From Girardia tigrina (lineage: Eukaryota), in NCBI GenBank assembly GCA_001938485.1, contig MQRK01230303.1, forward strand, positions 4,839-55,957: a stretch of DNA of 51,119 bases, read 5' to 3'. The notes under the pieces were generated by a model. The model saw nothing but the letters and a program-made list of their open reading frames with translations. It ran no database searches and was not told where the DNA came from. Position numbers and translations under genes: made by a program. Positions 5,990 to 46,957 of the stretch are shown here, one piece after another. The number at the start of each line of letters is the position of its first letter. The stretch's first letter is position 1.

Positions 5990-8900
5990 GGGATCCAGTA
6001 CTTATTATTTTCCGTTGCTATAATGTCATCTCTCAGTTTCCATTTATTTGTTCTTCCTTGTTTCAAATCTTTCTTGATTTGTTCGATTTCTTCATTGTCA
6101 TTCTGCCATTTGAAATTATTTGGTTCTTCGTGTATCGCTAGAATTCAAGTTTTAATCTTTCTTTTCTTTGCTTCTTCATGTGCTGTTTGGCACTGACTAC
6201 ATAATTCGCAAGAGTTTCTCGACATAGTATCTGCATTTGAGTGTCTTTCACCTTTCCTGTATTCCATTGTCATATCAAGACCGCTAAGAAAATTTATCCA
6301 TGTTTGAAATTGCGGTGTTATTGGGTTCTTTGTGGTCATCATAAACGTAATAGCTTTGTGGTCTGTTCGCAACAAGAATCTTTTCCCATATAAGAAATGC
6401 TTAAAATGNNNNNNNNNNNNNNNNNNNNCTAGTAATTCTTTTCTGGTAATGCAATAACCAAGTTCATGTTTATTCATCTTATGAGAACCATATGCTATGA
6501 CTCTTTCTCTTCCACTCGAGTCTTTTTGTGACAGTACTGCTCCAATCGTATCGAAACTTGCATCTGTGTCCAATATAAATTCTTTATCGAAATCTGGATA
6601 CTTCAAGATTGGAGTTTGAACCATTTTTTCTTTTAATCTTTGAAAAGCTTCGTCACATTCTTTTGTCCATATTATTTTCTTATCCTTGTTTTTGCCACAC
6701 AGGCCTTCTAAAACTTTCGAATATCTTGCATAATCTTTTATGAATTTTCTGTAATAATTTGCAAACCCAAGAAACTCCTTAAATGTTTAATACATGATGG
6801 GTTTTGAAATTTGTTAATCGCATCAATCTTTGTTTTATCAGTTTCTATACCATCTTTACTTATTACGTAGCCCAGAAATTTGGTCTTTTCTACTAGAAAT
6901 TGACATTTCGCTGGATTTATCCTCAAACCTGATTCTTTGATTTTTTGAAACACATTCTTTATTCTTTGTATATGTTCTTTCTTATCTTTAGAAAATATCA
7001 AGATATCATCTAGATATACGACTGCTTCCTTCGAGTTCAATTCCCCAAGAATTTTTACCATTAGTTCTTGAAAGGTGGCCGGGGCGGCTGCTATTCCGCA
7101 TGGCATTCTTTTAAAACAATATTGACCATTCTTTGTCGAGAATGCCGTTTTAATCTTTGATTCTTCCTCAAGTTCAACTTGATAGTATGCGTTTCCCAAG
7201 TCAATTGTAGTGAAATACTTTGCACCATTCAATGTGTTTAACATATCATCCACATTTAGCATAGGGAATGCTGGTCTGAGAGTAACTTTATTTAATTGTC
7301 GAAAATCCATACACACTCGTATTTCTTGTTTCTCTTTCTTCCAGACGCATACCAATGGAAAGTTCCATGGTGAACTACATTTTTCGATTATATCATTTTC
7401 TTCAAAATTTTTAATAACTTCGTCTAATGTTTCATCAAAATGCTTTGGTTGTCTATACGGCTTTACTAACACCGGTTCACCATTAGTCTCAATTTTGTGT
7501 TTCGTCAACGATGTTTTCCCAATATCCCATTTATCTGTCATGAATATCGACTTAAACTCTTTTATCATGTTCATCAACTGATCATCGACCTTACCTCGGT
7601 ATAGGTCCGTTATCCTTTTCAATCTGTCTTCATCTGATGGGCTATCCCTTATCATAAATACATAACTATTTTGTATTGATTTATTAATCAGCTTTATCCC
7701 AAAATTATCCAAAAAGTCCACCCCTGCTATCATTTCTGGGTTCATTCCTTTGACAACATAGAATTTTATATTCTTTTGGTTCCCTTCAATTTTAATCTTC
7801 AAGAGTACTGTTCCATAATTTATTAATTTCAAAGCATTTGCGCACGCTAAGCGTCTTCGCGATTCTCTAATCCTAAAATTTGGTATGTTCTTAATTAAAC
7901 TTAATTCAATCACATTTACTCTAGCGCCGGTGTCTAAAAGACAGTGTACTTCTCTATCTTTAATGTAAAAATCTATACTTGGTCTACCATCCAGTTTGTC
8001 ATATTTAATGTTAAGCTTTGTTATTTTTAAAATTTCTTCATTCTTCGTTTTGTTTCTTTTTTCTTCCATTTTACTACTAAAACAGTTTCCTTCACATTCT
8101 TCTTTCCAACAATCTAATTTACAAACTTCGAGGTGGTTATTTCCAGTCATACAATTACATATACAATCACACACACCATCATACTTATTTTTATCATTTA
8201 ATGAAGCACATTGATCACCGCTCCTGGTGATCGTGCCTCCTCGTTTCCCTGATCATTTTCATACGTTTATCTCTTTATCGGGGAAGACCCTTTTAGTTAA
8301 CTTTCCTTGATTTGATCTAGTCCATTCGTTTTCGCTGTCGTCATTGCATTCATCAATTTCCGCAACTGGGTATTGACGATTTTGAGGTCTATTATGGTAT
8401 CCTGCATTATGTTTTTTCTTCCAATCGCTGTTTCTACTGTACTGTTCTCTTTCCTTAAATCTATTCTTGTTAAGATAACATTGAGTTCTATAATGGCCAT
8501 TTCTGTTGCAGTGAGTACACTTCACATTTGGGCAATCTCTTCTTATGTGGCCTTCTTGACATGCAAAACATTTTACAGTTCTGTTAGAATTGTTTTTCGG
8601 TTTGAATCCATTATTACCTTGGTTCCTATTGTTGTGTTCGTAATGTCTATGCGGGATTCTTTCGTTGTGTACAACTTTGCGTCTAGGTACGGTTTTCCAA
8701 TTATCTTGTTTATTTACCGTTGTATATGCGCCACTGTTTCCTCACTTTCCATTTTACGTAGTTCGTACATATTGGTAACTACGCTTTTTATATCTTTGGT
8801 TTCAGTTGTTCCTCTCAGTTTTAATTCTTTTTTGATTTCATAACTGTCAACCATATTTAAATAGGCAAGGTTGAGTAGTTCTTTTTCAGACAATTTTTCT

Positions 8901-10271: not shown

Positions 10272-13200
10272 CAGTGGTGAGCTATAAGGGGCTCGCATGA
10301 GTTCTTTGTTAAATGGTTCTATGATTTTCCAGCAAGTTTTTTTTATTTCCCTTGTTCTTTTTTTATATATGTAATAAACAACAGTAACTATTAGCATTAA
10401 TATTTAAAAGTATTATTTACAGATTTGTTTTAATAATTTTACAAACATTTTCACTCATAAAAAATGAATACAAATAAATTTATTAAATTTCTTTGGAGAA
10501 GAAAAAAGAAAGAAATATGATACTATTGAAGTTGAGAATGAGGTTAACAATAATACGCACATTGATTCAATTAATGTGATACAAGTTGGAAAAGAAAATG
10601 AAAATAATTTACCTGATTGTTGGAGCGAGAAGCAAACATCGTATTTTAAAATACAATACAAGTGGTTATAAATTACAAATGGTAAATTGGGATGTCTTAT
10701 TTGCTCCGAATATAAAAACTTGAGTCTTGAAGAAAAACATTGCCATGTATCAAAGTAATGAATAGAAATGAAGTTGGAACCGAATGGAAACACTAAAGAT
10801 TCAAGAACCACGTAATCTAAGCAAAACGAATCATAAAAATAACCGAAGAAAGTAAGAAATCAATATTACCAAATTTAATTGATAACTTCAAAAATATTTA
10901 ATTCAGTCTATAGTCTGGTGAAGAGAAACCGACCGATGTCTGATTTACCCGATTTAATAGAGCTTGAGATTAAAATATTATTAATAAAAAAAAATTTTAT
11001 AAAAACAACCACGTTTTTCAAGCATTACCAATGCACTAAAAAGAGGAAAATAATTTTTTTTCTAGACATGTGTGAAATTTTATACCTAACCAAAAACGTG
11101 GGGCATAGAAATGATCAATTGTTACTAAAAAGCAGTAAAGAGGAAATAGCAGTTACTAATAGCAGTAATTCAGAAATCCGCCCGAAATATTATTTTTAGA
11201 AATATTATTTAACTATTTTTAGTTATCATTTAGGAATTTTTTTTTCAAAATTTTTTTTTATCAAATTGTATTGTCATCGGAAGCAAGCCTGTATAAAACT
11301 TCATTCATGAAAATAAACGAAAAGATTGCTATTTAATACAGTGCATAAATTTGTAGATAATCGTAAGTGGTTTTTTGCAAAAAACATTAGAAAAATTTAT
11401 TTTTTTTCAAAATTTTTTTTATCAAATTGTATTGCCATTGGAAGCAAGCCTGTATAATAAAATTCAGCTCAATTGGGTGACTGAAAGTGGTCGAAAAATC
11501 AATCGCAAGATTTGTTCCAGACAGACAAACAGACAAGAAAGCAAGCTAATAAAAACGTGGTAAAAATGGTATTGATTTTGGATTATCGTTGCATTCTAAA
11601 TTCTCAGGAATTAAAATAGCCAAACACATTTTCAAACAGATAAAACTAGAAATATTATTTAAAATAATAGAAAAAAATTGCAAAATTGCTATTATATTTG
11701 GCGAATCGACAAAATTATCAAAAACAAGTGTATTAGTAGTTTACTTACAAATTGAGATTACTGAACCATGTGTGATTTTTCTCTATCTTGTAGAGTTAGA
11801 AAATACTACCGCCAAATGTATACATGCTAATTTTATAAATACTTTAAATGCATATGGATTTACGATGAACTATTTGAAAAATCATCTCCTTGCATTTTGT
11901 TCTGATGAAACAAGTATCATATTACGAAACAAATCAAGTGTTGCTATCAAACTTCTAGAAACATATTCCTACATTGTGATTTGGCATTACATAGCTCATC
12001 GTTTAAAATTAGCTTTAGATGATGCGATAAAAAACATTAAAGAAACATTGAAGAAAAAAATTAAAATCATTTTTAAATATTTATAGATAAATTATATTCT
12101 TGTTACCATTAATCGCCTAAAAATAAACGAGAATTAGATATTATTCCTAAAAAACTTGGTATTGAAACTTTAAAGATCAACCATGCATGTAGTTTAAGAG
12201 CAACTCTTGCTGTATGGAGGAATTACCCAGTTTTATGGCAGCATTTTGCTGTGAATAACATTTATAAAGGCTTTTTAAACCGACTTTTAAATTTAGAATT
12301 TTTAAAAGATCTAGCATTAATGATCGATATCCTGCAGGAATTATCGTATCTCTCAGAAGGCCTACAAATTCGTAATATAAGCATTGTAAGAGCTATTTCG
12401 TTGATAATGCGAACAATCAATGTAATTAATAATTTACAAAATTCTTCTGGTTGTTACGTATCTAAAATTGAGTATATGTTAAAATCACAAGAATTTGAAT
12501 GTAATATCAAATTTCATAAATTACCACGAGAAAAATTACTTAACTCACTCGTGATGTCTTTAAAGGTTAGATTAATGCAACAAAGCAACTTTAAACTTAA
12601 AGATTAAAATTATGAAGATTCAGAAGATGAGTAATTCAAAAACATATTTAATGTATTTCTCCTGAAATATGGAATATAGAAGAAGTTACGTATCCCTGGC
12701 CAGAAGGAGAAAAGAGAATAAGAACTTTGAATTTTATTTTGAAAATGAAATTAAAATAAACGACTTCAGAGATTTAGTAGAAAACACAATCACTGGAAAA
12801 TTCCAAATCGAAATTCTCAAAACCGTGAAAAAAGCCAAGATCATTATGGAAACAATAGCAGTTAGCAGCTCTGAAGCTGAACGAGCTTTTAGTTCGATGA
12901 ACAATATCGTTACAACGAAAAGATCTTCTCTAACCGTTAAACGTGTTTCCGATTTTATGACTATCTGCTAAAATGAAAAATCTTTGGAAGAATTTAAACC
13001 TAACCTATATGTTAAATCTTTTTTAAAAAATCATCGCTTGGCTTTGGATAAACCTAAAGAATCAAAAGACGTGAAGTAGGAATAAAATACTGTATGGCGG
13101 CTTCTGGAATAAGTTGTCATTGCCAATATTCTTGTAGTAGTACTTTTAAGTTCTCTTTTACAAATGTCATATTTTTTTTATTTTATTATATTGTTTGTTG

Positions 13201-14035: not shown

Positions 14036-15760
14036 TTACATTTCTTTAATGTGGTAATAAATTACGATTCTATCTTCTCTGTTTCTCGTTATTTTGCGTC
14101 GGTCCAAGAAATTATCGTCTGTTTTCACTCGATTGGTTTTGTTTCTGTCATAATATAATTCCAAAGAGTCTTTCGGTACGTCAAATCGATTCGATAGAAA
14201 TTTGTTGATACTCGATATTCGATTGTTGTCAGAACAGACTTCGAATGATCGACATTTGCTATTGATTGGGACGAGCGATAAGGATAACTCGATTTTACTG
14301 GAGATAAGTGAGTCGATAATTATAAGTAAATCGATAATCAAATTTTACTCTGAAATAATTTTGTAATAAATATCGATTTTGTAATGATCAACGCAAAAAT
14401 TTTCAGAATTATTTAATAATTCATAAATATTTGAATCGTTTATTTTATATTGAGATATCGATTGAGGTTGAGAGAATAATTCGATTGAGGAAGGAGGCAC
14501 TTTTGTTAGATTGGAGATTTCAGAGATGATATGTGATAAATTGCTGGACACTGAATTTATTTTGTATGATTCACGATTGATATTGACTGGGACAAAGTTT
14601 ATTGATAGAGGAGCACCACCGCCTCTTCTATTACAAATTGATTAATTAATTAATGCGAATAATATTAAAATTATCTAACAATGGTATATCCGCACTGATT
14701 GTGTTTCCATCTTCTATTCCATAATACTCGAGTGTTCTGTGATCATCTAATCGTGTGGAATCAAATTTAAATTTCAGGTCGTTAAACTTATCTCTGTCAA
14801 ATTCTCCTCTTAAATCACATATACGATATTTCAAATTGCGAATTATCTCATTCGATCTCGTATGTATCATGTATCTATATTTTCCATTAACTTCATGTAT
14901 TGTCACTGTAATCGGTCTGATAAATAAAATGATCATAATTAAACCATTCTCGATCGCTCTCACCTTCCGCCATATTGTTCCATACAAATCTCATATGTCC
15001 GTCTAAATAATTCTCTCGCTGATTATTTGTATAAAATATCAATATAAATCGATCACTCACATTCATTTTTAGAAAAATTTCTAAACGATTTTTCTGAATT
15101 TGATGCGCAGTTCCTATTGCAAATTGATCAATTAATTCAGTCGAATAATATTAAAATTATCTAAAAATGGTTCATACGCATTGATTGTGTCTCCATCCTC
15201 TATTCCATACGACTCGAGTGTTCGGTCACCATCTAATATTTCGCCTGCAAATGAAAATTCCATTGATTGAATCGTGCTTGAGTTTGTTCCCATTCGATCA
15301 CATAATCGATACTTCAATTGGCGAATTGTCTCATTCGATCTCGCTTGTATCGTGTAGTTACGACCGTTTGTGATCACATCTTGTATAATCACACTAATCG
15401 GACTACAATACATCAAATGATCGATAAATCACTCTCAATCGACACAACTCGCTCTCACCTTCCACGCCGCAAATGCTCTCTATTGAATCTAAACGGAATC
15501 AATTATTAATCGACTCATTCCCTTCCTCAAACTCACTCTCGGTATTCCTCATTCCAGTCAAACAAAACATAATCGTCTTGTCCAATCTCGTATTTCCCAA
15601 TCCATTCGTGAGGAAAACAAATTCTATTTTCGAATATCAACAGAATATCCTCACACGGTTTGTCTACTTCATCCGCCAGCCTCTTCATGACATCCGATAC
15701 GCTGGCACCCGCTTTTATATTTAATGTATAATTGCGATTATCGTAACTTTTGAATCTCAT
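14036..15760 (-). CDS. Multi-ubiquitin/SUMO-like domain protein (~454 aa, 8 exons; 3 clear and 2 probable beta-grasp repeats)
   Basis: Exons 15760-15537, 15488-15459, 15402-15178, 15113-15061, 15018-14964, 14916-14680, 14627-14349 and 14297-14036 total 1365 nt in one open frame, with GT-AG introns of 42-64 nt. UBL signatures FAGEILDGDRTLESYGIEDGDTI and FDSTRLDDHRTLEYYGIEDGNTI. Linkers HLRRG|SP, EQYGG|RP, PLRGG|GAP. Confidence 0.82.
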
Positions 15761-16408: not shown

Positions 16409-16862
16409 ATGGGCGATGGTGTATAGTTTACACCAATATTTATAGGGACAGGATGCAGGTAACGAGACGAGGTAATGAACAATGATCGTCGTATGTTTGA
16501 TGATTTCCGACGTCGTCCTGTTTACAGGAAGGCTAAAGAGGACTATAGCGATGTCGATCGTTGCATTCGCAACATCCTGCTTAGCGGTGGCAGCATCTTT
16601 GTCGGCGCGTGGACCAACAATATTTATCGTTTCGACGAACTTGGCAAGGTAAACTATTAGTATGCGTTTGCTAATTGTTTATACTTATTCAGGGTCTACT
16701 ACAATGATGTCGAGACAGCGATTTCGCTTTGGATTAGGTGACTTTAATTCTATTAATTAAGAATTTTTTAACTTTTCAGGTTATTCAAGCAAGCCAAACG
16801 GACCGAAATCTCGCCCCGACTCGGCATTCCGACAAGCTGGGAGCCAATTAAAACCACTTGAG
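16409..16862 (+). CDS. Small spliced gene or pseudogene of unknown function, divergent from the UBL gene
   Basis: GC-richer exon-like blocks are separated by GT..AG introns of ~40-55 nt (near 16473-16527, 16649-16692 and 16738-16779). One frame reads through three exons (RLKRTIAMSIVAFATSCLAVAASLSARG...WEPIKTT*). Start and product are unresolved. Confidence 0.4.
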
Positions 16863-17594
16863 GATAATCGAGTTTGACTATCCTCAAATACGTGGAACAC
16901 GGGCTCTCATGCGTAAGGGGTGTCGGGTTTGGGACAGGATTTATATGAAGCTGCCTCGGGAGATTTGGTACAGGAAAGGGTTTGTATAATTGTGTCTCTG
17001 TCGTAACACTATGTTTCATAATCGAAATCTGTAAGCTTTAAATGATGCAATTAGAAACAGAGAATTGAAATACAAAATAAAAGAAAGGATGGAATGTTGT
17101 TAGTGAAAGATAAAGTATTATTAGTAAAACGTTTGACGAATTAGAATAAATTAAAAATGAGAGTGATAATAAAAAATTATATCGAATAGTATCGAGCATG
17201 GTGAAATCCTCTTTTACAAACTCATATAAAATATTTATAAAGTAACATCGGTCTCGAAATAAAACTGGATTTCAATAAATTATAATTGTGTGAGTCGAAG
17301 GACGACAAGGAACCTTTCGGAGATGACGCAGGCTGACCGTAGCATGTAAGGGGCACGCGGGCAGACCGACGTTTATTTCCTTGGGGTACGCCTCTCTCCA
17401 GCGGTAATCCTCATACGCCCCTCAGGAGCCAAAGGAGCCGAGTCGGTGTTTCATCGGGTTTCACCCCTCCACTGATAGTGGGCGTTGTCAGAAGACATTT
17501 CCACATCCCGCTCGGATAGCAATGCCTTTTAAAGGGGTGGATTGCAGGCCCAGACCCCCGTACTATGTTGGTCAGTACCCTAAAAAGGCAAGCT

Positions 17595-17693
17595 TCGGAC
17601 ACTTTAGCCTAGAGCAAGCTCTAGTTTCCCAGGGACACCACGTGGAGGTATGTCCGACTGGCTTAACACAGGTTACCAAAGTAACAGATCCCC
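17595..17693 (-). ncRNA. HDV-like (double-pseudoknot) self-cleaving ribozyme, copy 1
   Basis: Minus-strand RNA: P1 GGGGAU/GUCCCU with a G1-U wobble, P2 UCGGACAU/GUGUCCGA, P3 ACC/GGU, L3 UCCACGU, P1.1 CC/GG, P4 CUAGAG-CUUG-CUCUAG, and J4/2 GCUAA containing the catalytic C. Predicted cleavage is 5' of G17693. Confidence 0.88.
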
Positions 17694-19346
17694 AAAATTT
17701 TGGGGGGTAATCTTTGTTTATCGTGTTTAAAATCGAAATTTATCGAACGGTCATGATATTAGCATCATCCACTCAGAAACTGAGTTACCAGTCGGGTCAT
17801 CCTCGGTACTGGTAGAGAACACGAAGGCGCACCGACGTACACACAACGTGTTGATGTCACCGAAGGAGACGCGTCTGTTCCCGTAATTAATAAGAAAATA
17901 GAGAGCAATCACCGAGGGAGTATGAAGAGGGGTAAGATAAGTGTGAGTTGCCGTTTTACTCAGGAAAGCGGATGGGGGCTCAGGGCCAACGAAGATGTCT
18001 TGAAACGGAGGGAACACGACAATATATATGTTATTTTCTTCAATTTTGCATAAATATTATTTTGTTTATGTTTTATTAATTTTTTAAAATGTTTAAATTT
18101 AGATCTTTAAAAGTATTTTAATGGACATCATGTAAAAATTCAGTTCCTAAATAATTTTTCTCTAATTTTAAATCATTCCATTTTAAATTATTTTTTTAAT
18201 AAAACTTTCCATTGACAATTAAATTCAATAACATTATGATTTTTATTATAAACTTGATTTTAAAATATTCAATAAATTATTTTTTAATAAAAACTTTCCG
18301 CGTACAATTAAATTCGATAAACATTCTAATTTTATTTTAAATAGTGTTACATAATATTCAAAATCTTCTTTACAATATTCTTTAACTTTGATGATAATAT
18401 TTTAATTGTGAATTTTTAAAACTTAATTTTTATAAAAATTTGTCTCAATTTAATTAAAATATTATCATTACTCTAAACTTTTCAAAAAAAACTTATTTCA
18501 TTTTAATTAGTAACATACTATCTGTGAACTATAATTTTTACAAAAATTATTTCAATTTGATTAGTAGAAATATTACCTATAAAATGTATTTTTTATGCAA
18601 TCTTATTTATTTTAATTAGTAAAAAATATTATCTATAACTTAAATTTTTTATTTAAAAAAATATTTCATTTTAATTAGTCGAACATTATTTTTAATTTAT
18701 CTAAAATATAAATATGATTTTTAATTTAAAAATATCAAAAATTTAAAGTTCACCANNNNNNNNNNNNNNNNNNNNNNNNNNNNNNNNNNNNNNNNNNNNN
18801 NNNNNAGAAAGTTATTGTTTATATAGAAAGATGACCATTGCGTCACAGTGTGTTACGTCAAAATACTCTAATATGATTGGACGAATCACTTTGCACATTT
18901 AGACTAGGTTTACAAAACTTTATCTAGAGTGCTTCAGTAACTGTCCTTTCATAATTGTGATCAAAGTTACTAATCAAAACCCGAAAATAATAACTTTCTA
19001 ATTAAATACAGAACTGAAGATGCCACAAAAGTGGCGAAACATGTTTTCAAACGTCGGTCTTAGTCTTTTCGGAGATGATGCAGGCTGACCGTAGCATGCA
19101 AGGGGCACGCGGGCAGACCGACGTTTATTGCTTTTGAATACGCCTCCCTCCAGAGGTAATCTGCATACCCCCGTCAGGAGCCAAAGGAGCCGAGTCGGTG
19201 TTTCATCGGGTTTCACCCCTCAAATGATAGTGGGCGTTGTCGGAAGACATTTCCACATCCCGCTCGGATAGCAATGCCTTTTAAAGGGGTGGATTGCAGG
19301 CCCAGACCCCCGTACTATGTTGGTCAGTACCCTAAAAAGGCAAGCT

Positions 19347-19445
19347 TCGGACACTTTAGCCTAGAGCAAGCTCTAGTTTCCCAGGGACACCACGTGGAGG
19401 TATGTCCGACTGGCTTAACACAGGTTACCAAAGTAACAGATCCCC
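19347..19445 (-). ncRNA. HDV-like self-cleaving ribozyme, copy 2
   Basis: Same sequence as 17595-17693, offset by 1752 nt. Confidence 0.85.
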
Positions 19446-20628
19446 AAAATTTTGGGGGGTAATCTTTGTTTATCGTGTTTAAAATCGAAATTTATCGAAC
19501 GGTCATGATATTAGCATCATCCACTCAGAAACTGAGTTACCAGTCGGGTCATCCTCGGTACTGGTAGAGAACACGAAGGCGCACCGACGTACACACAACG
19601 TGTTGATGTCACCGAAGGAGACGCGTCTGTTCCCGTAATTAATAAGAAAATAGAGAGCAATCACCGAGGGAGTATGAAGAGGGGTAAGATAAGTGTGAGT
19701 TGCCGTTTTACTCAGGAAAGCGGATGGGGGCTCAGGGCCAACGAAGATGTCTTGAAACGGAGGGAACACGACAATATATATGTTATTTTCTTCAATTTTG
19801 CATAAATATTATTTTGTTTATGTTTTATTAATTTTTTAAAATGTTTAAATTTAGATCTTTAAAAGTATTTTAATGGACATCATGTAAAAATTCAGTTCCT
19901 AAATAATTTTTCTCTAATTTTAAATCATTCCATTTTAAATTATTTTTTTAATAAAACTTTCCATTGACAATTAAATTCAATAACATTATGATTTTTATTA
20001 TAAACTTGATTTTAAAATATTCAATAAATTATTTTTTAATAAAAACTTTCCGCGTACAATTAAATTCGATAAACATTCTAATTTTATTTTAAATAGTGTT
20101 ACATAATATTCAAAATCTTCTTTACAATATTCTTTAACTTTGATGATAATATTTTAATTGTGAATTTTTAAAACTTAATTTTTATAAAAATTTGTCTCAA
20201 TTTAATTAAAATATTATCATTACTCTAAACTTTTCAAAAAAAACTTATTTCATTTTAATTAGTAACATACTATCTGTGAACTATAATTTTTACAAAAATT
20301 ATTTCAATTTGATTAGTAGAAATATTACCTATAAAATGTATTTTTTATGCAATCTTATTTATTTTAATTAGTAAAAAATATTATCTATAACTTAAATTTT
20401 TTATTTAAAAAAATATTTCATTTTAATTAGTCGAACATTATTTTTAATTTATCTAAAATATAAATATGATTTTTAATTTAAAAATATCAAAAATTTAAAG
20501 TTCACCAAAAGGAACTCAAACACCAACAAATCCTCAAAACAAACTAAATTCATTATAACAACAACAACATCAAAACTTTGCCTTTGTAATTCAAAAGCAT
20601 GATTGCCGCCACGTGGAATTTCTTGTTC

Positions 20629-23031: not shown

Positions 23032-25488
23032 TAGGGTTTCTGGATGCTGTTTAACAGTAACAGTAAAACAGCTGTTTTTTCGTCAAAAAATCAAAAACAG
23101 CAAACAGTTGTTTTTTCATCACTGTTTTTTTACTGTTTTTCAGTAAAACTTAAAGTTTTCCTTTTAAAGTTTTACCTTTGAAACTTCTACCTGTAAAACT
23201 TTTACTGTAAACAATTTTTGGAGATTTTATTAACAAAAACATATGAAAAATGTATAAAAAGCGTTTAACCAAAAAAAAACTTCAGTATCCCGCCATGTGC
23301 GGGACAATTAATTTCTAACGGCCAAATTTTAAAACGTATTTTCACATAATGTGAAACAGAAGCCATTACTAATAGAAAATTAATCATTTAAAACAATTAA
23401 AAACAAATTAAAACCATTGATTTACTTAACGAAAATAATTAAATCAGAAAAAATATTTATTTCAGTAAAAGTTGCAATGTTTTTTTATAATGTGAATCAC
23501 ATTATAAATCGTTAAGTAAATCAACGATTTTAATTTGTTTTTAATTGTTTTAAATGATTAATTTTCTATTAGTAATGACTTCTGTTTTGGAATTTGCCAC
23601 AAAACGACGAAATCCGTACACAAAAGAGCTTGAAGGTCAATGCAATCGATGCAATAGCATAATTAAGTGCTCTGGCAATTCAACGACAACTTTAAAGAGA
23701 CATCTACAGCGGCATGGCATCAAGTTTGATCAGGCTGGGGAACCAAGCACATCCAAGGATGGAATTCAGACCGAAAAGAGACAAAAAACTGTTGCTGACT
23801 TTTTTGAACGAGAATCTCTCAAGGAAATTGTATCAGACATGGCAACGGATGGAGTAACTATTCGAGCAATAACAAGAAATAAGTTCATTAGAAAATCCAT
23901 AACACGCGATGGTCACAAATTGCCTGCGAATGAAACTGATGTCATGAAACTATTGTACGATGATTTTGAAGAAAAACAGAAGAAAATGGTTGATGAGATT
24001 CAAGCGAAGGTTGCGAAAGGTATCAAGTTCAGCATGACCGTCGATGAGGCTACAACTTTACGTGGTCGTCGATATTTNNNNNNNNNNNNNNNNNNNNNNN
24101 NNNNNNNNNNNNNNNNNNNNNNNNNNNNNNNNNNNNNNNNNNNNNNNNNNNNNNNNNNNAGCATGATTGAAATTCTTCGAGATCATCTCAAATCGTTTGG
24201 CATTTCAATGGAAAAAGATTTGGTTGGATCCACACAGGATGGAGCTGCAGTTAATAAAAGATTTATCAGCCTCATTGATGCTATCTGGCAGTTCTGTCTC
24301 AATCACAGTTTACACCTTAGAGTATGTGACACTGTACAAAAAGAAATCTGAAATTGAAGAACCAATCATCATTGATGAAGATCCAAATGAGGAAGATAAT
24401 TTTGATGAACCAACCGATTTTGAATTCATCAATGAAAACCATAATGAGATCGATTATCATGAAATACTCAAAAAGTCTCGCAAGATTGTCAAATTATTCA
24501 AACATTCACCTGTTCGAAATCATGTGCTTCAAACAAAAATCAAACAAATTCACTCTCGAGAAATTGAAATGCATTTGGATGTGAAAACACGCTGGAATTC
24601 AATCCCAACCATGCTTGAACCGTTAATTAAAACCGAAGCATCAATTCGTGAGACTCTTCAGGATTTCAAAGCACTCGATCTGATTGAAAACTTTGATTTT
24701 GNCGCTCTGAAATCATTGCTAGCAGCAATGGAGCCAGTTAAGCTAGCAGTAGAGAATCTTAGCAGAGAGGACTCAACTTTAATGAGCGCGGATACAATTT
24801 TAAATTTTATGTTCACAAAACTATCAAACATTAAAAATGAAATTGCAGAGAAATTACTGGAAAATCTAAAGCAGCGAGTTGGTGAAAGACTCAATCCCGA
24901 CTAAATGAATCTCTTACGCAGCCTGAAAGATCCATCGATTGTGCCTTCGAGAAACACGATTAATTTTGCAGGTAGTCTTGCAAAACGACTATTTGAAGTT
25001 TCTAACGAAGATACTGGCGATCAATTACCTCATGAAGAAATATCTGAAAATTTATCAATGCAGGAGGAACTAAATGCTTTGCTTCAAAAAAGTGAAACTA
25101 CAGTCACGCCAGCTAATGATGCTTTCAAGTGGCTAAAGTCGGAATTTACACTTTTCAAGAACACTGGACAGCGAACTGAAAACCTACAAAAACTCTTAAA
25201 TGTCATTTTGACCATCAAACCCACTTCCACGGACGTAGAACGCGTGTTTTCTGTCACCTCAAGTTTTTGCACAAAAATTCGATCTCGTCTATCAGATAAA
25301 TCACTGCAAGCATTGGTCTTTTTGAAATATTATTATAATAAATCAAATAAATAATTAAAAGGCTTTAATTTCATATTAAAAAGTTTTTTTCCTTACATTT
25401 AATTTAATAAAATTCAAAAAACAGTTTTTAAAAATCAGAAACAGTTAAACAGCTGTTTTTTGAAAACCACTGTTTTTCAGAAACCCTA
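23032..25488 (+). mobile_element. hAT DNA transposon (BED-finger transposase; near-complete, with a frameshift and stop) with TIRs and 8-bp TSD
   Basis: TIR TAGGGTTTCTG / CAGAAACCCTA; TSD ATTTAGAC at 23024-23031 and 25489-25496. BED finger CNRC..HLQRH, TVDE, TQDGA, CLNHSLHL, DVKTRWNS and PTSTDVERVFS. Sub-terminal AACAG repeats. Confidence 0.95.
23354..23587. repeat. ~79-bp-arm inverted repeat overlapping the hAT transposase start
   Basis: AAACAGAAGCCATTACTAATAG...ACTTAACGA (23354-23432) versus TCGTTAAGT...CTATTAGTAATGACTTCTGTTT (23509-23587), with few mismatches. Confidence 0.9.
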
Positions 25489-28356: not shown

Positions 28357-31300
28357 TCAACTTAACTGTTTGGTATCAGCTCCACGCGTATATAAGGCAG
28401 AACGTAACCATCTTCGATATTCTTCAGCCTTTTGAGCATTGGGTATATTTTTTAACCATTCTCTTGTACTTATGTTCTTACAGTTTTTACACCATGATGT
28501 ATTACTAAATTCATAAATGTCTTTAACTTCTTTACATTTTGTACATATTTCAAATATATTTTCTTGAACAACTGTGTTAAATTGAACTTCTTCTACTTTT
28601 TCATTCTCATAAATATCTTCTTCATGATATGATGATGCTTTATCAACTTGAAAAAATGATTCTTCTTCTATTTCCCAAGTCACATCATCAGAAATATCCA
28701 CTACCATTTTTCCATTTATTGCTTTATAATTTGAAATATAATAAGGATTCATCTTTGAATTTGCATCAGGTTCTCTCCTTTTTAAAAGATTCACATCATG
28801 TGTAAAGGTTTTAATGATGCAATCTTTTTTATCTGATTTCTTAATTCCATGTTGATAATCTTTTTCCCATGGTTTTATAATTTCCGAAGAAACATTTTCA
28901 GTTGATATTAATTTGAAGAAATCATCTGATTTAACTTTCTTTTTTATTTCCTTTGAATGTTTTCTTCTCTAATATCATTACATCGTTTAAAACTATGTTA
29001 TATTTTATTTTAGGTGCAATATATCGTCCAAATATAATTCCACCTTCTCCATAATCGTTTTTGCCTTGCCACATATTACCTCCAACGTAACCATTAGCAT
29101 TTAATTGATCATAATATTTTTAGATATATAAATTGAATAAGAATCTGAATAATATACATGAGGTTTTTTAAATCCATCAATAGTTTGTATAAATTTATTC
29201 ATGAATCTTTTTGAGTGTGCTAAAATAAATGATACAAAATGAACAGGGGTTGAAATGAGTTTTTATGTTTTTTACTTGATTTTATAATTCATTCTTTAGC
29301 TTCTTCAAATGTTAAATCAATTCCTTTTCGATTTTTCTTTCGTTTCACAACCCATAAATCTTTTCATTATTATTAAATCAACATAATTTTGTTTTAAGGT
29401 TGAAGTGCTCCAAATAAACATTTGATAATCCCCATTTGAATTGTTTTGCCATATAGTGAATTCATTAACAGTTTAACCATTTCATCTCCTACTTGATTTC
29501 CTTCAGCTTTATATTGTTTTCTTAAGTTGAATAATTTTTGAATAAATGATTTAAATGGAGACTAAGGTAAGTTTCTTTCATAAACAGTACCCTCATATAT
29601 ATTTAAGATTTCTCCTCCAGTTTCTACAATTTCTTGAATATCTACACTTGTTAAAACATCTCTAGCATATCCATTTCTAAATCTATTTACTTCATATTTA
29701 TTAGATTTCTCTCCATCTAAGATATTGTCTTTTACTGGAAGATGTTGTAAGAAGTTATCCGGTGGATAATGATATTTCACGTCAAAAAACCCTGTTCTTG
29801 GTCTAAACTTTTTAGAATTAAATAGTTTTAGAAATTCAAATTCGTCTTCTGGTTTAAATGCTCCTGCTGATTTAATATCAAGAAATTCACTATCATCATC
29901 GCTCATAGCACTTGGATATAAACTTGTAGCATCAAATGCCATTAAAAAATCAATTATCACAATTTTTGAGATTTTTATCTCTTCTCTAATTTCTAGAAAC
30001 TTTTTAACTGTTTCATTTTCTAGACATTCCTCCGGTATTGGTTTTTTAAGCCGTTTAAAGTCTTTCTGTCCTACTATTTTTAAAGTTGAATTTATAATCG
30101 ATGTCTTATACCATTACACAATTCAGGAATTTTTGTAAAATCGACATCGACATGTTTATTTAAAATCTTTAATATTTCATGCCATAATGGTGAATTGAAA
30201 TCTCTAATTGATGCAAACACTCTTCCTCCTGTGATTGATTTTCTAATAAAATCTCTCAGATATGGTTTTGAATGCGTATTAATGGGTTCTTTCTCAGGCT
30301 TAAACCATCATTTTAATGTTAAAGATGGAATTGTAAGACATGATGACATGTTTTGACCTACTAAATCCATCATCACTTTTGAATATTTTAAAACACAACA
30401 TGCTGCAGATATTACATCAAGTCTAAGATATGAGTCCCATTCGTCGCGTTTACTATGCTAATTACTTAATGTATGGTTTTCGTGATCTAATTTAGATTTT
30501 CTTAAATTCATAGGTATTTTAAATGTTTGACACATTGATTCTAAACTATATTTACAATGTTTATAAGAGTCTATAAATATTAGTTTTTGTAAAAACTGAC
30601 CGTTTAAATTTTTCTTTCTTGTTTTTTTCATAAACGATTGTTTAATTAATTCTTGATTTTGTGTACTTGTGAAAGGATTTGTATTTTTCCTAAATATTTA
30701 AATATATCGGTTAAACAAATTCTAATTCATTCGAATATTTGTACATTTTTATTAATTTCATCTAGTATAAGTTGATTGAGATTTTCTCCTGGATTTAAAG
30801 ATTCTCCTAAAATATTTTCAACATCTTTAATGCGTACAATTCCAACAACCAAGGTTCAAAATAACCCATTTTATTTGGTGATCCTTCTAAATCCCAGAAG
30901 AATGTATTATCTTCATTTACATTTTTTGTATTTATAATATAATTTATAATATCTTTAACATTTTTATCATTAGAAGTGATTTTGAATTTTGTAAAATTCT
31001 TTTTAATTTCTTCAATGCCTTTCTGTTTATTTTGTTTATCTATGAGACAATAGTGATTTTGATAAAGATAGAAAACCATGTCATCATTATTATCTCTAAC
31101 ATTTTTATTTGGATAAAGATGTCTATTATTTTCATCATATCTTAGAAAATTTGTATTAAATTTATTATTAAAGGATGCCATCTTTTTTCCGTCATAACAC
31201 CTTTTCCTGTATGACCACTATTACCATGTAAAAACTTTTTATATTTTTCAATCATAATTTCATTTATACATTCATATAGTGTTTTAGGTACAAAACATTT

Positions 31301-34206: not shown

Positions 34207-37200
34207 GTAATAATTGTAATTAATATTCTTTTAATTTAAAAAATTAGTAAACAATAAAAATGTTTTTTTACATTTGTCAGTAAATTTATGAATATTTTTT
34301 AGTTAAATTTAAAATTAATATTTAATACACTATTGGGTTCTTGATGAAAAGAATTTATCATCAACACAAAATTTTATTTCTACCACAATTTGAGTTTTTT
34401 TAAAAAAATATTTCCGAGGAACTTTTGCACTTTCTTTTTACACAAACCATTATAAATAAGAATTGATATAAATATAAATATGGTTATCGTATTTTTTTCG
34501 AATTAAAATTTTATACTTTTTTTTAATAAAGAATTATAAAAAGAATTAAAATTTTGTCAAAGATTTTGTTTCGTCTTTTATTAAATTTCAATTTTATTGT
34601 ACCTTGAAATTTACTTGTTTCTCAATTAAATTTCCCAATTCTATACAATAGCATTTTCATTTCGTTTTCATAATAGTTATAAAAATTACTTTGGATTTAA
34701 TAATATTCGAAAATAGAATTTAAATTCGCTATTTCGTTTAATTTAACATTTTTTAAATTACCCCTTTTTTACATAAAAATAAAATTATATTTCCATTAAT
34801 AATTACGTTTTCCAAATAAAATTAAAACCGCAGTTTCATTTAAATCGATTTAATAGTTTTACAATTATATTTTGATTCCAATTAAAATTTCCAAAAAATA
34901 AAATTAAAGTGACATTTTTAATTTACTTCGATTTTATCGTGTAAAATAAAAGAAAGTTACAAAAATATTTTAGTTTACTTTCATTTCGCAAATAAAATAT
35001 TAAACTTTTGATTTTATTTCACTTAAATATTTTCATCAAATTTGAAATTAACTTTTTTATTTTATAATAAATCTTTTAATAATAAATCTTTTTAATCTCT
35101 CGAAATCAAAAATATTTTTTATCTAATTTTCTTTTATTAATAAGATATTAATTGAACAAGATATACGTAAACTCATTTTTCACTATCAGAGACGTGATTT
35201 AACAAGCTCAAATCTCTGTAAGGAGAATAATGCAACTCTTGGATAAGGTCCGATGAGTTTACGGATGTGTTCTAAATGGATAGAGAAATTCAGGAATTGA
35301 GATAAATCACAAGAAGACCAAGCAAAAGAAGGCAGACAATCGATAGAATTGTGTAAGCAATTTGATGAGATTGTGCAAGAGAATACAACCGCAACTATGT
35401 GGACAAAGGCATCGCAACTGAATGTTTCGCAAGATGCAGTCTGGAAATATCTGAAGAATATGAGGAAGAGTTTCATGTGCAATACATGGGTGACGCATTA
35501 TTTGTCTGATGAAACGAGGCAAAAAATCATTGAAATTTGTATCGAACCACCAATGAAAGAATTTACTGCATAGCTTTTTAACATGATACGATATTTGAAT
35601 GCATTTTGATAATTCTTTTTTCAAAATCTATGGAACAGTCACAATTAAGCACAAAACACATAACTTCGATATGTGCTTCTGAAAAAAACAATTATCTGGA
35701 ATATTTTGGGATTGTTGGAGAGTACTTCTTATTAGCATACTCAAAAACTGACTCAAAAGGAAGACTGATTGCTTCTTGCGCCACCATCACGATACTGCTA
35801 CTAAAGCAAAGGCGAATCTGTAAAAAAATAGAACTTCAACGGCTTCCTCAACCACAATTCTCTCCAAACTTTCTCCATCAGATTTTAATACATTCGTTTC
35901 CATGAAAGTAATACTGAGATGAAAGAAATTCACATGTTTGATTGTCACTCCGGTGTACGTCGAACGTTGGATTGGATGCAAGGATTTAGTGTTCTTCGTC
36001 GATAGTGTCAAAAAACGTCCTGGTTGTAGGGAACGATGTGTAGCATACTGTGGTAGCTATAAGGAGTTTTGACGAGATAATGACGAATAAATATTGCGTG
36101 TTATATGACTTTTTGTTTTAACTCGGAAAAGACTTATCGGCCAACCTATATTCACAAACTTTTGATTTTACGATTCCTTAGACCACAATGCACAAACATT
36201 TCCCTGTGCCTTGCTACCCTCAAACCTAAGTCATCATTAGAATCATTACATGATCCTTTGGGAGACATTTCCTAAAATAATTCATAATTATGTATCGTAA
36301 TATATTTACTCAAGTTCTACAAAAATTTGAACGTATGATTTCTCAAGTGGTTGTAAAATAGTGCTGTGATTTGACTTTATACGCTGATGTTTTGTAAAAT
36401 ATTTATTTAATAGAATGAACAAGTTTTTACTATTCACAATGTCATCATTTATGCAGAACATTTATTAATAGCACAAACAGAATCGCCATTTTACCAATTT
36501 TCAATCGTTCATCTTCCTTTGCGAAGACATTGATAACCTTTTCAATCCAAAATTGACAGACTCCAAATTAATTTAATAATTAAAATTAATTATCGATTTT
36601 ATTATTGATTAAATTATGTTGAAAAACTTTACTGATTTTTAAAATATTAATTATTTAAAATTAATTTTTACAAAATTTCAAAGCTTATTTGATACTTAAA
36701 ATTTTAAATTAAAGTGAGTAACTTCCAAATAATAAAAACGAAAAATACTAATCAGCCATCAAGGTAGAGAAGACCCATTGAAGAGTAACATTTACATATG
36801 TCACTAAGCGCATATTATTCAAAAATATTTAATTGCAATGACATAAAAATACTTTGAGAATTAATACATACGAATGGAGAATAAATATTGCTGTAGGAGA
36901 GAGAAGACGGAACTTTGTTGGGAACTTCTTTTCATTTGTTGCATTACTTTTGTTCGGGTTCCTTTTTGTGAACTTTAATTATTGATATTTTTTAAATTTT
37001 TGATATTTTGAAATTAAAAATCATATTTTGTATTTTTTAAAAAAAGTAATGTTCGACTAATTAAAACGAAATAAGTTTTAAATAAAGAATTTTTTAGTTT
37101 ATAGATAATATTTTAATTAAACTGGGACGATTTTTTATAAAAATTGTTTTAGAAATTGACAATTAAAATAACAGCTTTGGAGTGAAAGAATATTGTAAAG

Positions 37201-38790
37201 AAGATTTTGATATATTTTGTATCACTATTTAAAATCATAATGTTTATTGAATTTAATTGTCGTTAAAAGTTTTAATTCGGTTTTTTAATTTTTAAAGGAC
37301 AAAATATTTTTGTCCAAAAAAACTTAATGATTTAATTTTTGTAAAGAAAGTTGTTGAAATGTTTTAAATCGTAATATGAAAATTTTATTCTCAAAAAAAA
37401 ATAAATTAGGTTATAGAATTTGTAAATTTTCTTTTCATAATACTTTTTAATCAAGATTAAGTAAAATAAATTTCAAAAAATAAAAGTAATATTTCTCTTT
37501 CATCTTTTTTCCGGAAATAATATATTTAAACATAATTCTGTAGCAAATGAAGTAATATTCTTCCGTATTTTATGACGCATTAAATTTTAAATTTTGCCGT
37601 TTAAATTAAATTGTATATTTTACTTTCAAAAAATAGTTACAAATATTGATTTGTTTCAAAATAATTTAAATGCTTAATAATTCATGATGAAAGTTTATTT
37701 TAAATAATAATTTAAAATCGTCGCTAAGTTGTAGACCTAAACAGTTCTTAATTATACTATAATTATTAAAAAAATATAAAATCACATATTTAAACGTTAG
37801 TAATACAATTTTAATAATAAAATACAGTGTATTTTATTCATAAAAGTAAAATTAAATACAGTTGCAAATATTATTTAAATTATAGATAATTATAAAATTG
37901 TATAATGTAATAAGTGTAATTAATATTCTTTTAATTTAAAAAATTATTAAACAATAAAAATGTTTTTTTTACATTTGTCAGTAAATTTATGAATATTTTT
38001 TAGTTAAATTTAAAATTAATATTTAATACACTATTGGGTTCTTGATCAAAAGACCTTGTCATGAACACAAAACTTTATTTCTACCACAATTTGAGTTGTT
38101 TTTAACAAATATTTCCGAGGAACTTTTGCACTTTCTTTTTACACATTATAAATCAGAATTGATATAAATATAAATATGGTTATCGGATTTTTTTTGAATT
38201 AAAATTCTATACTTTTTTTAATAAAAAATTTTAAAGTTAATTAAAATTTTGTCACAAACATTTTGTTTCATCTTTTATTAAATTTCAATTTTATTGTACC
38301 TTGAAATTTACTTGTTTCTCAATTAAATTTCCCGATTCTATACAATAGCATTTTTTATTTCGCTTTTATAATAAATTTAAAAATTACTTTGGATTTAATA
38401 ATATTTGAAAATAGAATTTAAATTCGCAATTTCGTTTAATTTAACATTTTTTAAATTAACCCTTTTTACATAAAAATAAAATTATATTTCCATTAATAAT
38501 TACGTTTTCCAAATAAAATTAAAACCGCAGTTTCATTTAAATCGATTTAATAGTTTTACAATTATATTTTGATTCCAATTAAAATTTCCAAGAATTAAAA
38601 TTATAGTGACATTTTTAATTTACTTCGATTTAATCGTGTAAAATAAAAGAAAGTTACAAAAATATTTTAATTTACTTTCATTTCGCAAATAAATATTAAA
38701 CTTTATATTACTTTAGATTTTATTTCACTTAAATATTTTCATCAAATTTGAAATTAACTTTTTAGCTTTATAATAAATCTTTTAATAACC
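34207..38790. repeat. Dispersed AT-rich repeat family: ~880-bp direct copies at ~34207-35090 and ~37905-38790
   Basis: The two copies are collinear and highly similar. Segment ~36955-37270 is also the reverse-complement homologue of the AT-rich part of the 18020-18755 / 19772-20520 duplication. Confidence 0.85.
35165..36150 (+). mobile_element. Degenerate mariner element with right TIR
   Basis: Relics of WIEKFR, TWVTHYLS (WVPH-like) and PQPQFSP (HPPYSP-like), plus the terminal GAAAAGACTTATCGGCCAACCTATA. Confidence 0.75.
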
Positions 38791-46690: not shown

Positions 46691-46957
46691 ATTTGTTGGC
46701 AATACTTCTTTGTAATTATTGTTTCACCCGTATTCATAAAGCTGTGATCAAGTAGACAGAATGCAGACCACCAAACAGTCACCATTTATTTTTGTGGCTT
46801 TACTAAGTATTTCTTCAGAAAGTTGTAAAAACATTTTTAATCTGGTCTTGGAATTTGTCATTGCTGTATGAATTGATTTCCAATTTAAGCCCGATTTCGA
46901 TAACCGATAGCAAATGTTTGAGATTCCTTTGATTAGTGATCAGTAACAGTAACGTTA
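46691..46957. repeat. Chimeric local duplicate: copy of 39206-39296 (mariner) fused to copy of 40702-40868 (exportin-like)
   Basis: ATTTGTTGGCAATACTTCT...CCAAACAGTCAC followed within ~10 nt by TTTTTGTGGCTTTACTAAG...CAGTAACAGTAACGTT, in the same order and orientation as the originals. Confidence 0.88.

What the first reader, a model, noticed from the sequence alone, without database searches (positions are those of the whole stretch)
17595..17693. Complete HDV-like self-cleaving ribozyme on the minus strand (second copy at 19347-19445)
Every element of the nested double pseudoknot can be paired by eye: P1 GGGGAU/GUCCCU with the G-U wobble at the cleavage site, 8-bp P2, P3 ACC/GGU around L3 UCCACGU, P1.1, a CUUG-capped P4, and J4/2 GCUAA with the catalytic C. 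HDV-like ribozymes are known to define the 5' ends of R2 and RTE non-LTR retrotransposons and their SIDE derivatives. Here no rDNA target and no RT ORF is adjacent. The overlapping ORF-track calls are probably spurious.
Basis: partly seen in the sequence, partly recalled or inferred. Interest (0 to 1): 0.88.

Follow-up and report, generated by a model that had tools for sequence, protein, structure and literature searches.

The report
HDV-like ribozyme heading a short retroelement
A 99-base stretch, present twice inside a duplicated segment of an animal genome, has every sequence and pairing hallmark of the HDV-like self-cutting RNA that many non-LTR retrotransposons use to trim their own 5' end; it is a new example of a well-known kind, not a new kind.

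Summary
On the minus strand, 17693-17595 and 19445-19347 are identical, and every helix of the nested double pseudoknot pairs. The active-site C, the G.U at the cleavage site and the L3 U/CC/G are all present. No dinucleotide shuffle of the window reached its descriptor score (0 of 140). The three best Rfam matches to the 139-nt stretch are all HDV-class models, though all fall below their gathering scores. The one outside relative found (a 772-nt ENA contig) is 88% identical. Its homology starts exactly at the predicted cleavage nucleotide, and its upstream flank is unrelated. That is the signature of a ribozyme-headed non-LTR retroelement. No reverse transcriptase, endonuclease or rDNA lies next to it, so it is most likely a short non-autonomous or internally deleted copy. 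The second copy is not independent evidence. Both copies sit in a 1441-bp duplicate that shares more than 1 kb of upstream flank and abuts an assembly gap. Covariation cannot be judged from two sequences, and catalysis is untested. This is a new member of a known kind, of modest interest.

The parts
17595..17693 (-). HDV-like ribozyme, copy A. P1 17693-17688/17636-17631; J1/2 17687-17658 (hairpin 17685-17672); P2 17657-17650/17602-17595; P3 17649-17647/17639-17637; L3 17646-17640; P1.1 17645-17644/17630-17629; P4 17624-17609; J4/2 17608-17603 with the putative catalytic C at 17607. Predicted cleavage is 5' of G17693.
19347..19445 (-). HDV-like ribozyme, copy B. Identical to copy A, with every sub-feature at +1752.
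17505..17693 (-). Core of the repeat family: ribozyme plus 90 nt. It is 88% identical to ENA contig L001:687-496. Homology starts exactly at G17693. A further 22-nt block lies at 17454-17433.
17315..17693 (-). Element copy A as far as copies A and B remain alignable (379 nt, 54% GC). All 16 A/B differences lie in 17327-17490.
19022..19445 (-). Element copy B with its likely 3' continuation. A 12-bp stem (19126-19115 with 19060-19049) spans the A/B boundary at 19067. Two small hairpins follow, down to about 19022. The 3' end is not defined.
   Evidence: z -2.29, against +0.25 for copy A
17690..17707 (-). Hairpin formed by the upstream flank with the first four G of P1 (also at 19442-19459). It belongs to this insertion site, not to the family, and could compete with P1.
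   Evidence: absent from L001
17315..18755 (.). Duplicated segment A. It contains the element, a 327-nt flank of 46% GC (17694-18020) and an AT-rich repeat of 14% GC (18021-18755). It ends at the assembly gap 18756-18805.
19067..20507 (.). Duplicated segment B, 98.9% identical to A. The stretch matching 17491-18755 of A has no difference at all.

Best explanation
The 99-nt sequence is an HDV-like self-cleaving ribozyme that forms the 5' end of a short, non-coding member of a non-LTR retroelement family. This copy is either a SIDE-like non-autonomous element or an internally deleted one. The proposed mechanism is inferred from the family. The element has no promoter of its own and is transcribed as part of a longer minus-strand host or read-through transcript. 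The nascent RNA then folds into the double pseudoknot. C87 (17607) in J4/2 acts in the transesterification at the phosphate 5' of G1 (17693). The upstream host RNA leaves with a 2',3'-cyclic phosphate, and the element RNA starts precisely at G17693 with a 5'-OH. What is shown here: the fold can be drawn without a mismatch, the site is far better than chance, HDV-class models are its best matches, and the family's homology boundary coincides with the predicted cleavage site. What is inferred: catalysis, co-transcription, and past copying by a reverse transcriptase supplied in trans. At this locus, an upstream flank hairpin that sequesters the first four G of P1 may slow or reduce cleavage.
For: There are 30 base pairs in six helices, with the conserved letters in place. 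The descriptor score is 61, against a maximum of 56 in 140 window shuffles and 52 in GC-matched shuffles. None of 100 shuffles gave a hit with the conserved letters. The top three of 4227 Rfam families on the 139-nt stretch are RF02682, RF00094 and RF01787, and the alignments match the P3-L3-P3 core and the J4/2 letters of the consensus lines. Independent contig L001 has 88% identity over 189 nt beginning exactly at G17693. The upstream flanks are unrelated: the local alignment score was equalled by 59 of 300 shuffles. Between the two sequences, both stem substitutions keep their pair (G.U to G-C in P1, G-C to G.U in P2). The P4 and J1/2-hairpin changes fall in loops. The literature fits. 'Conserved downstream, different upstream' is the stated signature of retrotransposon-borne HDV-like ribozymes, and such elements lack promoters (PMC6765202). 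R2 ribozymes have a P1 of 6-7 bp, a J1/2 of 23 to more than 700 nt and a variable P4 (PMC3774820). SIDEs are about 0.5-kb elements with a 5' ribozyme and no ORF (PMC3414825).
Against: All Rfam scores are well below gathering (21.3 against 44; 18.3 against 50; 16.2 against 37), and the whole-window gathering scan is empty. Only two independent sequences exist, so there is no compensatory double change. The one relative carries two changes in the L3 core, one of which unpairs P1.1, and it gets no HDV-class Rfam match. So it is not shown that selection keeps the core. Nested folding gives no signal (z -0.31), and a competing nested fold of -29.1 kcal/mol exists. The flank hairpin (-8.1 kcal/mol) competes with P1. 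No autonomous partner, defined 3' end, tail or target-site duplication was found. The two window copies share more than 1 kb of upstream flank, so they do not document two insertions.
Confidence: 0.65

Rival explanations
1. It is a fossil 5' fragment of a once full-length autonomous non-LTR element, cut down by deletion or rearrangement. On this view it was never a non-autonomous family that spread as a short unit. The ribozyme motif is intact by chance of recency and no longer has a role.
For: The two sequences share only about 190-260 nt after the cleavage site and then diverge. Copy A seems to lack the 3' stem partner that copy B has. No 3' tail or target-site duplication is seen. The relative's core carries two L3 changes and has no Rfam HDV match.
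Against: No RT or endonuclease remnant lies downstream on the minus strand. The window ribozyme has no mismatch in 30 pairs and all conserved letters.
Confidence: 0.2
2. It is a host-kept (co-opted) ribozyme that processes a host transcript, as proposed for the intronic CPEB3 ribozyme, and not part of a mobile element.
For: It lies among host genes: ubiquitin-like-domain ORFs at 14036-15760 on the same strand downstream, and a probable plus-strand first exon at 16475-16660. Its best-matching animal Rfam model is drz-agam-1.
Against: The relative shares nothing with the window on the upstream side or beyond about 260 nt downstream. The sharp boundary at the cleavage site fits insertion rather than orthology.
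Confidence: 0.07
3. The two same-sense ribozymes 1752 nt apart belong to a true tandem array. Its transcript is cut at each ribozyme into unit-length RNA, which is possibly circularised, as in hammerhead retrozymes.
For: There are two identical ribozymes in direct orientation at 1752-nt spacing. Tandem ribozyme-bearing repeats that give circRNAs are known for hammerheads (PMC7229834, PMC7761336).
Against: There are only two units. The duplicate abuts an N gap. The stretch 17491-18755 is 100% identical between copies while the last 176 nt differ at 16 sites, a pattern typical of assembly or conversion artefacts. The sequence after copy B (19066-18806) does not recur after copy A. The outside relative shares only the part from the cleavage site on, not the 1-kb upstream part of the 'unit'.
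Confidence: 0.05
4. It is a chance resemblance with no ribozyme ancestry.
For: All Rfam scores are below gathering. The nested MFE z-score is -0.31.
Against: No shuffle reached the score (0 of 140), and none of 100 had the conserved letters. Three different HDV-class models are the top three Rfam matches. The sequence is conserved in an unrelated contig with a boundary at the cleavage site.
Confidence: 0.02

Closest known systems
R2 5' ribozyme and R2-derived SIDEs (Eickbush & Eickbush; PMC3774820, PMC3414825)
   Same: It is an HDV-like double pseudoknot at the very 5' end of the element. P1 is 6 bp (R2: typically 6-7). J1/2 is long, P4 is variable, and the L3 U and G and the J4/2 C are conserved. 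A SIDE is a unit of about 0.5 kb with a 5' ribozyme and no ORF, like the roughly 380-425-nt unit here.
   Different: There is no 28S rDNA target: no rRNA match in the window, and the upstream flanks differ between the two loci. No similarity to a parental 3' UTR could be tested. No poly(A) or defined 3' end was found.
HDV-like ribozymes of RTE and baggins-type non-LTR elements (drz-Agam-2 family; PMC6765202, PMC4908430)
   Same: The elements are dispersed rather than site-specific, with conserved downstream and varying upstream sequence. They have no promoter of their own. J1/2 carries a helix.
   Different: RF01788 (drz-agam-2-2) gave no match at E up to 10. The J1/2 hairpin here does not bridge the ends of J1/2 as the P1.2 'pinch' does. 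No RTE-type RT or 3' microsatellite was found.
Rfam RF02682 (HDV-F-prausnitzii), RF00094 (HDV_ribozyme), RF01787 (drz-agam-1)
   Same: These are the best three Rfam matches. They share the P3-L3-P3 core, the P1.1 GG and the J4/2 letters in the printed alignments.
   Different: Scores are roughly 36-48% of each family's gathering score. P1 is one pair shorter than in the drz-agam-1 consensus. The 30-nt J1/2 is not modelled, so the models mis-assign P1 and P2.
CPEB3 intronic ribozyme (RF00622)
   Same: It has the same fold class and lies in non-coding DNA between or within host genes.
   Different: There is no Rfam match. The boundary evidence points to a mobile unit, not a conserved orthologous intron.
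Non-LTR retrozymes (tandem hammerhead repeats; PMC7229834)
   Same: Two same-sense self-cleaving motifs occur in direct repeats.
   Different: The ribozyme class is different. The 1752-nt spacing contrasts with about 150-300 bp units. There are only two units, next to an assembly gap.

Membership tests
HDV-like self-cleaving ribozyme (fold class) | Nested double pseudoknot in the canonical order: P1, P2, P3, P1.1 and P4, with the P1 3' strand directly after P3 and P1.1 directly after P1 | tested here: met
   30 pairs in 6 helices with no mismatch in the window copy. With the 3' partners slid by 1-3 columns, only 11-48% of cells pair, against 98% in register.
HDV-like self-cleaving ribozyme (fold class) | Active-site C in J4/2 followed by N-A-A; G.U wobble closing P1 at the cleavage site; L3 with a U and a G (reverse wobble) and two C for P1.1 | tested here: met
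   C87-U-A-A, G1.U63, and L3 U48, C49, C50, G53. The importance of the L3 G and U is stated in PMC3774820. None of 100 shuffles had a descriptor hit with these letters.
HDV-like self-cleaving ribozyme (fold class) | Score at or above the gathering threshold of a curated HDV-class covariance model | tested here: not met
   RF02682 21.3/44, RF00094 18.3/50, RF01787 16.2/37. RF00622 and RF01788 gave no match. These models are lineage-specific and cannot model pseudoknots, so this lowers membership in those Rfam families, not in the fold class.
HDV-like self-cleaving ribozyme (fold class) | Covariation supporting the helices | tested here: inconclusive
   Only two distinct sequences. There are 2 one-sided pair-keeping changes, 0 double changes and 1 unpaired cell in P1.1.
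HDV-like self-cleaving ribozyme (fold class) | Site-specific self-scission giving 5'-OH and 2',3'-cyclic phosphate ends | not testable with these tools
   No RNA data or assay is available here.
Ribozyme-headed non-LTR retroelement (R2, RTE, baggins, L1Tc and their SIDEs) | Copies share sequence from the cleavage site onward and differ upstream | tested here: met
   Window against L001: homology starts at G17693 = L001:687, and the upstream flanks are unrelated. This rests on only two independent loci.
Ribozyme-headed non-LTR retroelement (R2, RTE, baggins, L1Tc and their SIDEs) | RT and endonuclease ORF downstream (autonomous member) | tested here: not met
   No RT or EN domain in minus-strand ORFs downstream or in any ORF of 100 aa or more, except a Ty3-like pol at 6145-8174. 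At most it is a non-autonomous or deleted copy.
SIDE (short internally deleted element) | 3' end shared with an autonomous partner that supplies the RT; defined 3' end or tail; target-site features of that partner | not testable with these tools
   No partner element was found. No collection of animal genomes could be searched by DNA. The 3' end is undefined.
R2 | Insertion in the 28S rRNA gene | tested here: not met
   No rRNA match in the window at Rfam gathering. The two loci have different flanks.
Deltavirus-like circular RNA agent | Ribozymes in both polarities, a delta-antigen ORF and a rod-like circular RNA genome not encoded in host DNA | tested here: not met
   The ribozyme is on one strand only. 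It is embedded in a chromosomal segment with NPL4 and exportin exons and transposon remnants. The overlapping ORFs match no family.

The most novel reading that the evidence does not exclude
The 1752-nt direct repeat is real and part of a longer array. Its transcript is cut by the HDV-like ribozyme of each unit into unit-length RNAs that are ligated into circles. That would be a retrozyme-like, genome-encoded circRNA family driven by an HDV-like ribozyme instead of a hammerhead.
Probability: 0.04. Interest if true: 0.65.

Novelty: new member of a known kind. Interest (0 to 1): 0.3.

Why it matters
HDV-like ribozymes at the 5' ends of non-LTR retroelements are well documented. One more example mainly improves annotation. 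It explains a GC-rich non-coding block, marks the overlapping ORF calls as spurious, and flags a short repeat family whose autonomous partner remains to be found. It is a clean case in which the family's homology boundary coincides to the nucleotide with the predicted cleavage site. Rfam's lineage-specific models miss it at their thresholds. That shows descriptor-type or boundary-based evidence is needed to annotate this ribozyme class in animal genomes.

Tried and rejected
1. The Rfam gathering scan of the whole window found nothing. E-value mode gave only sub-threshold hits.
2. Nested MFE folding was uninformative for a pseudoknot (z -0.31).
3. Exact look-ups of two overlapping ORFs in public assemblies found nothing on record.
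4. A protein-word search with the 63-aa minus-strand ORF found no candidate. A search with P0001 found only itself.
5. The profile search of 1.84 billion representatives returned only P0001 plus four tandem-repeat proteins. I judged those to be noise from repeated low-complexity matches.
6. A 20-mer of the core in JGI metagenomes gave one hit.
7. A core 22-mer in viral contigs and a J1/2 21-mer in viral and prokaryotic genome contigs gave 0 hits.
8. A covariance model built from the two sequences, searched with filters off, found no third copy in the window (next best 13.5 bits).
9. The first loose version of my descriptor also hit AT-rich sites, so I replaced it with a scored version.
10. Ruminski 2011 and Webb 2009 are not held in the paper library, and the ENA sample accession appears in no paper.
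12. The control sequences were dinucleotide shuffles only.

Full report
**Observation**

On the minus strand, 17693->17595 and 19445->19347 are 99 nt each and identical. I number from G17693 = 1.
- P1 is 1-6 with 58-63. It has a G.U at the cleavage site, a U.G at the top, and three G-C and one A-U between.
- J1/2 is 7-36 and contains a 5-bp hairpin (9-13/18-22).
- P2 is 37-44 with 92-99 (8 bp).
- P3 is 45-47 with 55-57, around a 7-nt L3.
- P1.1 joins the two C of L3 (49-50) to G64-G65, which follow P1 directly.
- P4 is 70-75 with 80-85, with a CUUG loop.
- J4/2 (86-91) carries C87 (window 17607) followed by U-A-A.

**Is it more than chance?**

I wrote a scored descriptor of the HDV-type topology. 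It requires P3 and P1.1 to be Watson-Crick, P1 of 6-7 bp, P2 of 5-9 bp, a P4 hairpin and J4/2 C-N-R-A.
- The two sites score 61. The next best site in the window scores 50.
- The maximum was 56 in 140 dinucleotide shuffles of the window.
- The maximum was 52 in 40 sets of shuffles of the local GC-rich block.
- None of 249 descriptor hits in 100 shuffles carried the conserved letters: G1.U, and L3 U, CC and G.

Rfam at gathering thresholds finds nothing in the window. In E-value mode the picture is different.
- On the 139-nt stretch, the three best of 4227 families are all HDV-class models: RF02682 (21.3 bits, E 0.03), RF00094 (18.3 bits) and RF01787 (16.2 bits). All are on the minus strand at the site.
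- The printed alignments match the P3-L3-P3 core, the GG of P1.1 and the J4/2 letters of the family consensus lines.
- All three scores are less than half of the gathering scores.
- These models are lineage-specific, cannot encode the pseudoknots, and do not model a 30-nt J1/2.

The failure therefore counts against membership in those Rfam families, not against the fold class.

**The second copy**

The two ribozymes lie in a 1441-bp duplicate, 17315-18755 = 19067-20507, at 98.9% identity.
- Copy A's duplicate ends exactly at the N gap 18756-18805, so its true extent is hidden.
- All 16 differences lie in 17327-17490. The 1265 nt from 17491 to 18755, which include more than 1 kb upstream of the ribozyme, have none.
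- The sequences after the common part differ: 17314 downward against 19066-18806.

This pattern suggests an assembly or conversion artefact, or a recent segmental duplication. It does not suggest two insertions. The second copy is real in the sequence as given but adds no independent support.

**A relative from elsewhere**

The plus-strand ORF that overlaps the ribozyme (17522-17710) served as a handle. It found one protein, P0001, on a 772-nt ENA contig (L001).
- At the DNA level, L001 is 88% identical to the window over 189 nt, 17693-17505 = L001:687-496. A second 22-nt block follows at 17454-17433.
- The alignment begins exactly at G17693, the predicted first nucleotide of the cleaved RNA.
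- The upstream flanks show no similarity. The best local score was equalled by 59 of 300 shuffles.
- Nothing else of L001 matches the window.

'Conserved downstream, different upstream' is the published signature of retrotransposon-borne HDV-like ribozymes (PMC6765202).

**Pair counts**

I counted the full pseudoknotted structure on the two-sequence alignment.
- 59 of 60 cells pair.
- The two substitutions inside stems both keep the pair: G.U to G-C in P1 and G-C to G.U in P2.
- The changes in P4 and in the J1/2 hairpin fall in their loops, including a 3-nt length change in L4.
- There is no double compensatory change, and two sequences cannot give one with any weight.
- The relative also carries two changes in L3, one of which unpairs P1.1, and it gets no HDV-class Rfam match.
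- L001 has 0.85x coverage, so sequencing errors are possible.

Either way, conservation of the catalytic core in the family is not shown. PMC3414825 reports a SIDE ribozyme with two L3 differences that still cleaved, though at a lower level.

**Context**

The window is animal-type nuclear DNA of about 30% GC. It contains the following:
- NPL4 and exportin exons.
- A Ty3-like pol at 6145-8174 on the minus strand.
- hAT remnants.
- A run of ubiquitin-like-domain ORFs at 14036-15760 on the minus strand.

No non-LTR RT or endonuclease domain occurs in any ORF of 100 aa or more, and there is no rRNA match. The ORFs overlapping the element match no Pfam family. The apparent 'conservation' of P0001 is explained by the nucleotide conservation, and its ends run into unrelated flank. 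A covariance model built from the two sequences finds no third copy in the window.

**The 3' side**

Copies A and B stop aligning at 17315/19067. In copy B, a 12-bp stem joins 19126-19115 to 19060-19049, which lies across that boundary. Two small hairpins follow, down to about 19022. This 357-nt stretch folds better than 99 of 100 shuffles (z -2.29). Copy A's counterpart does not (z +0.25). Copy B therefore probably keeps more of the element's 3' part, and copy A is cut short. No tail, microsatellite or target-site duplication was recognised, so the 3' end is undefined.

**Mechanism**

The mechanism is inferred from the family. The unit has no evident promoter and would be transcribed within a longer minus-strand RNA. 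The ribozyme folds co-transcriptionally and cleaves 5' of G17693. This releases an RNA with a 5'-OH that begins at the first base of the element. An RT supplied in trans would have copied such RNA in the past.

At this locus the flank forms a hairpin with the first four G of P1 (17707-17690, -8.1 kcal/mol, against -7.4 for the P1 duplex). Flanking sequence is known to modulate cleavage in this class (PMC3774820). The J1/2 hairpin resembles, but does not reproduce, the P1.2 'pinch' domain of drz-Agam-2-1 (PMC4908430).

**Comparison and novelty**

The closest known things are the R2 5' ribozyme with its SIDEs, and the ribozymes of dispersed RTE and baggins-type elements.
- It works like them.
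- Membership in R2 is excluded, because there is no rDNA target.
- Membership in the SIDE category cannot be tested without a partner element.
- It is not a deltavirus-like agent: the ribozyme is on one strand only, there is no antigen-like ORF, and the setting is chromosomal.

I rate it a new member of a known kind, with interest 0.3. The most novel reading still open is a true tandem array giving unit-length or circular RNAs through an HDV-like ribozyme. I put that at about 4%.

The control sequences were shuffles only.
- Early in my own reasoning I began to write, from memory, a few letters of the L3 loop of the virus's ribozyme and of an R2/28S junction. None of those letters entered a tool call, a comparison or this report.
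- If those count as breaks of the element, that is a slip.
- The short search patterns typed were copied from the window as shown.

Noticed in passing
window 6145-8174 (-): A Ty3/gypsy-type retroelement pol: aspartyl protease and RT in ORF 6738-8174, and an RNase H domain in ORF 6145-6624. It is split into at least two ORFs, with a 20-N assembly gap (6409-6428) inside the second. LTRs and the number of breaks were not examined.
   Followed up: partly
window 23554-25354 (+) and 12669-12971 (+): hAT-type transposase remnants: a weak BED zinc finger and hAT C-terminal dimerisation domains. The first is interrupted by N gaps at 24078-24159 and 24702.
   Followed up: no
window 14036-15760 (-): A run of ORFs, each holding a ubiquitin-like domain (Pfam ubiquitin / Rad60-SLD), with a 486-nt direct repeat (14628-14776 and 15114-15262, 81%). 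This is probably one multi-UBL host gene, on the same strand and downstream of the ribozyme.
   Followed up: partly
window 16475-16660 (+): A 61-aa ATG-started ORF that looks like a genuine first exon of a plus-strand gene, with no Pfam match. If that gene continues to higher coordinates, the ribozyme element lies antisense within or just beyond it.
   Followed up: no
window 18021-18755 and 19773-20507; 36991-37277: An extremely AT-rich block (14% GC) with internal repeats of roughly 90-160 nt lies directly upstream of the GC-rich flank. An 80-85% identical inverted copy lies at 36991-37277, so this is a dispersed AT-rich repeat.
   Followed up: partly
window 17694-18020 (-): A 327-nt block of 46% GC immediately upstream of the cleavage site, in otherwise AT-rich DNA. 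It has no similarity to L001, no Pfam match for its 88-aa ORF and no Rfam match. Its nature is unexplained.
   Followed up: partly
window 34229-34996 and 37930-38693; 40699-40867 and 46788-46956: Further direct repeats: about 0.77 kb at 3.7-kb spacing (83-97% identical), next to the NPL4 exons; and a 169-nt repeat at 6.1-kb spacing (99% identical), near the exportin exon. They may be further assembly duplications or tandem gene fragments.
   Followed up: no
window 29562-29960 (-): A weak match (E 2.9e-4, below the Pfam cut-off) to organellar/viral type-B DNA polymerase. It may be a remnant of a Polinton-like element.
   Followed up: no
L002 (VFSW01100615.1) 1959-1978: The 20-mer of the ribozyme core occurs by chance at the 3' end of a GC-rich bacterial coding region. 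This is a reminder that short core words alone are not specific.
   Followed up: yes
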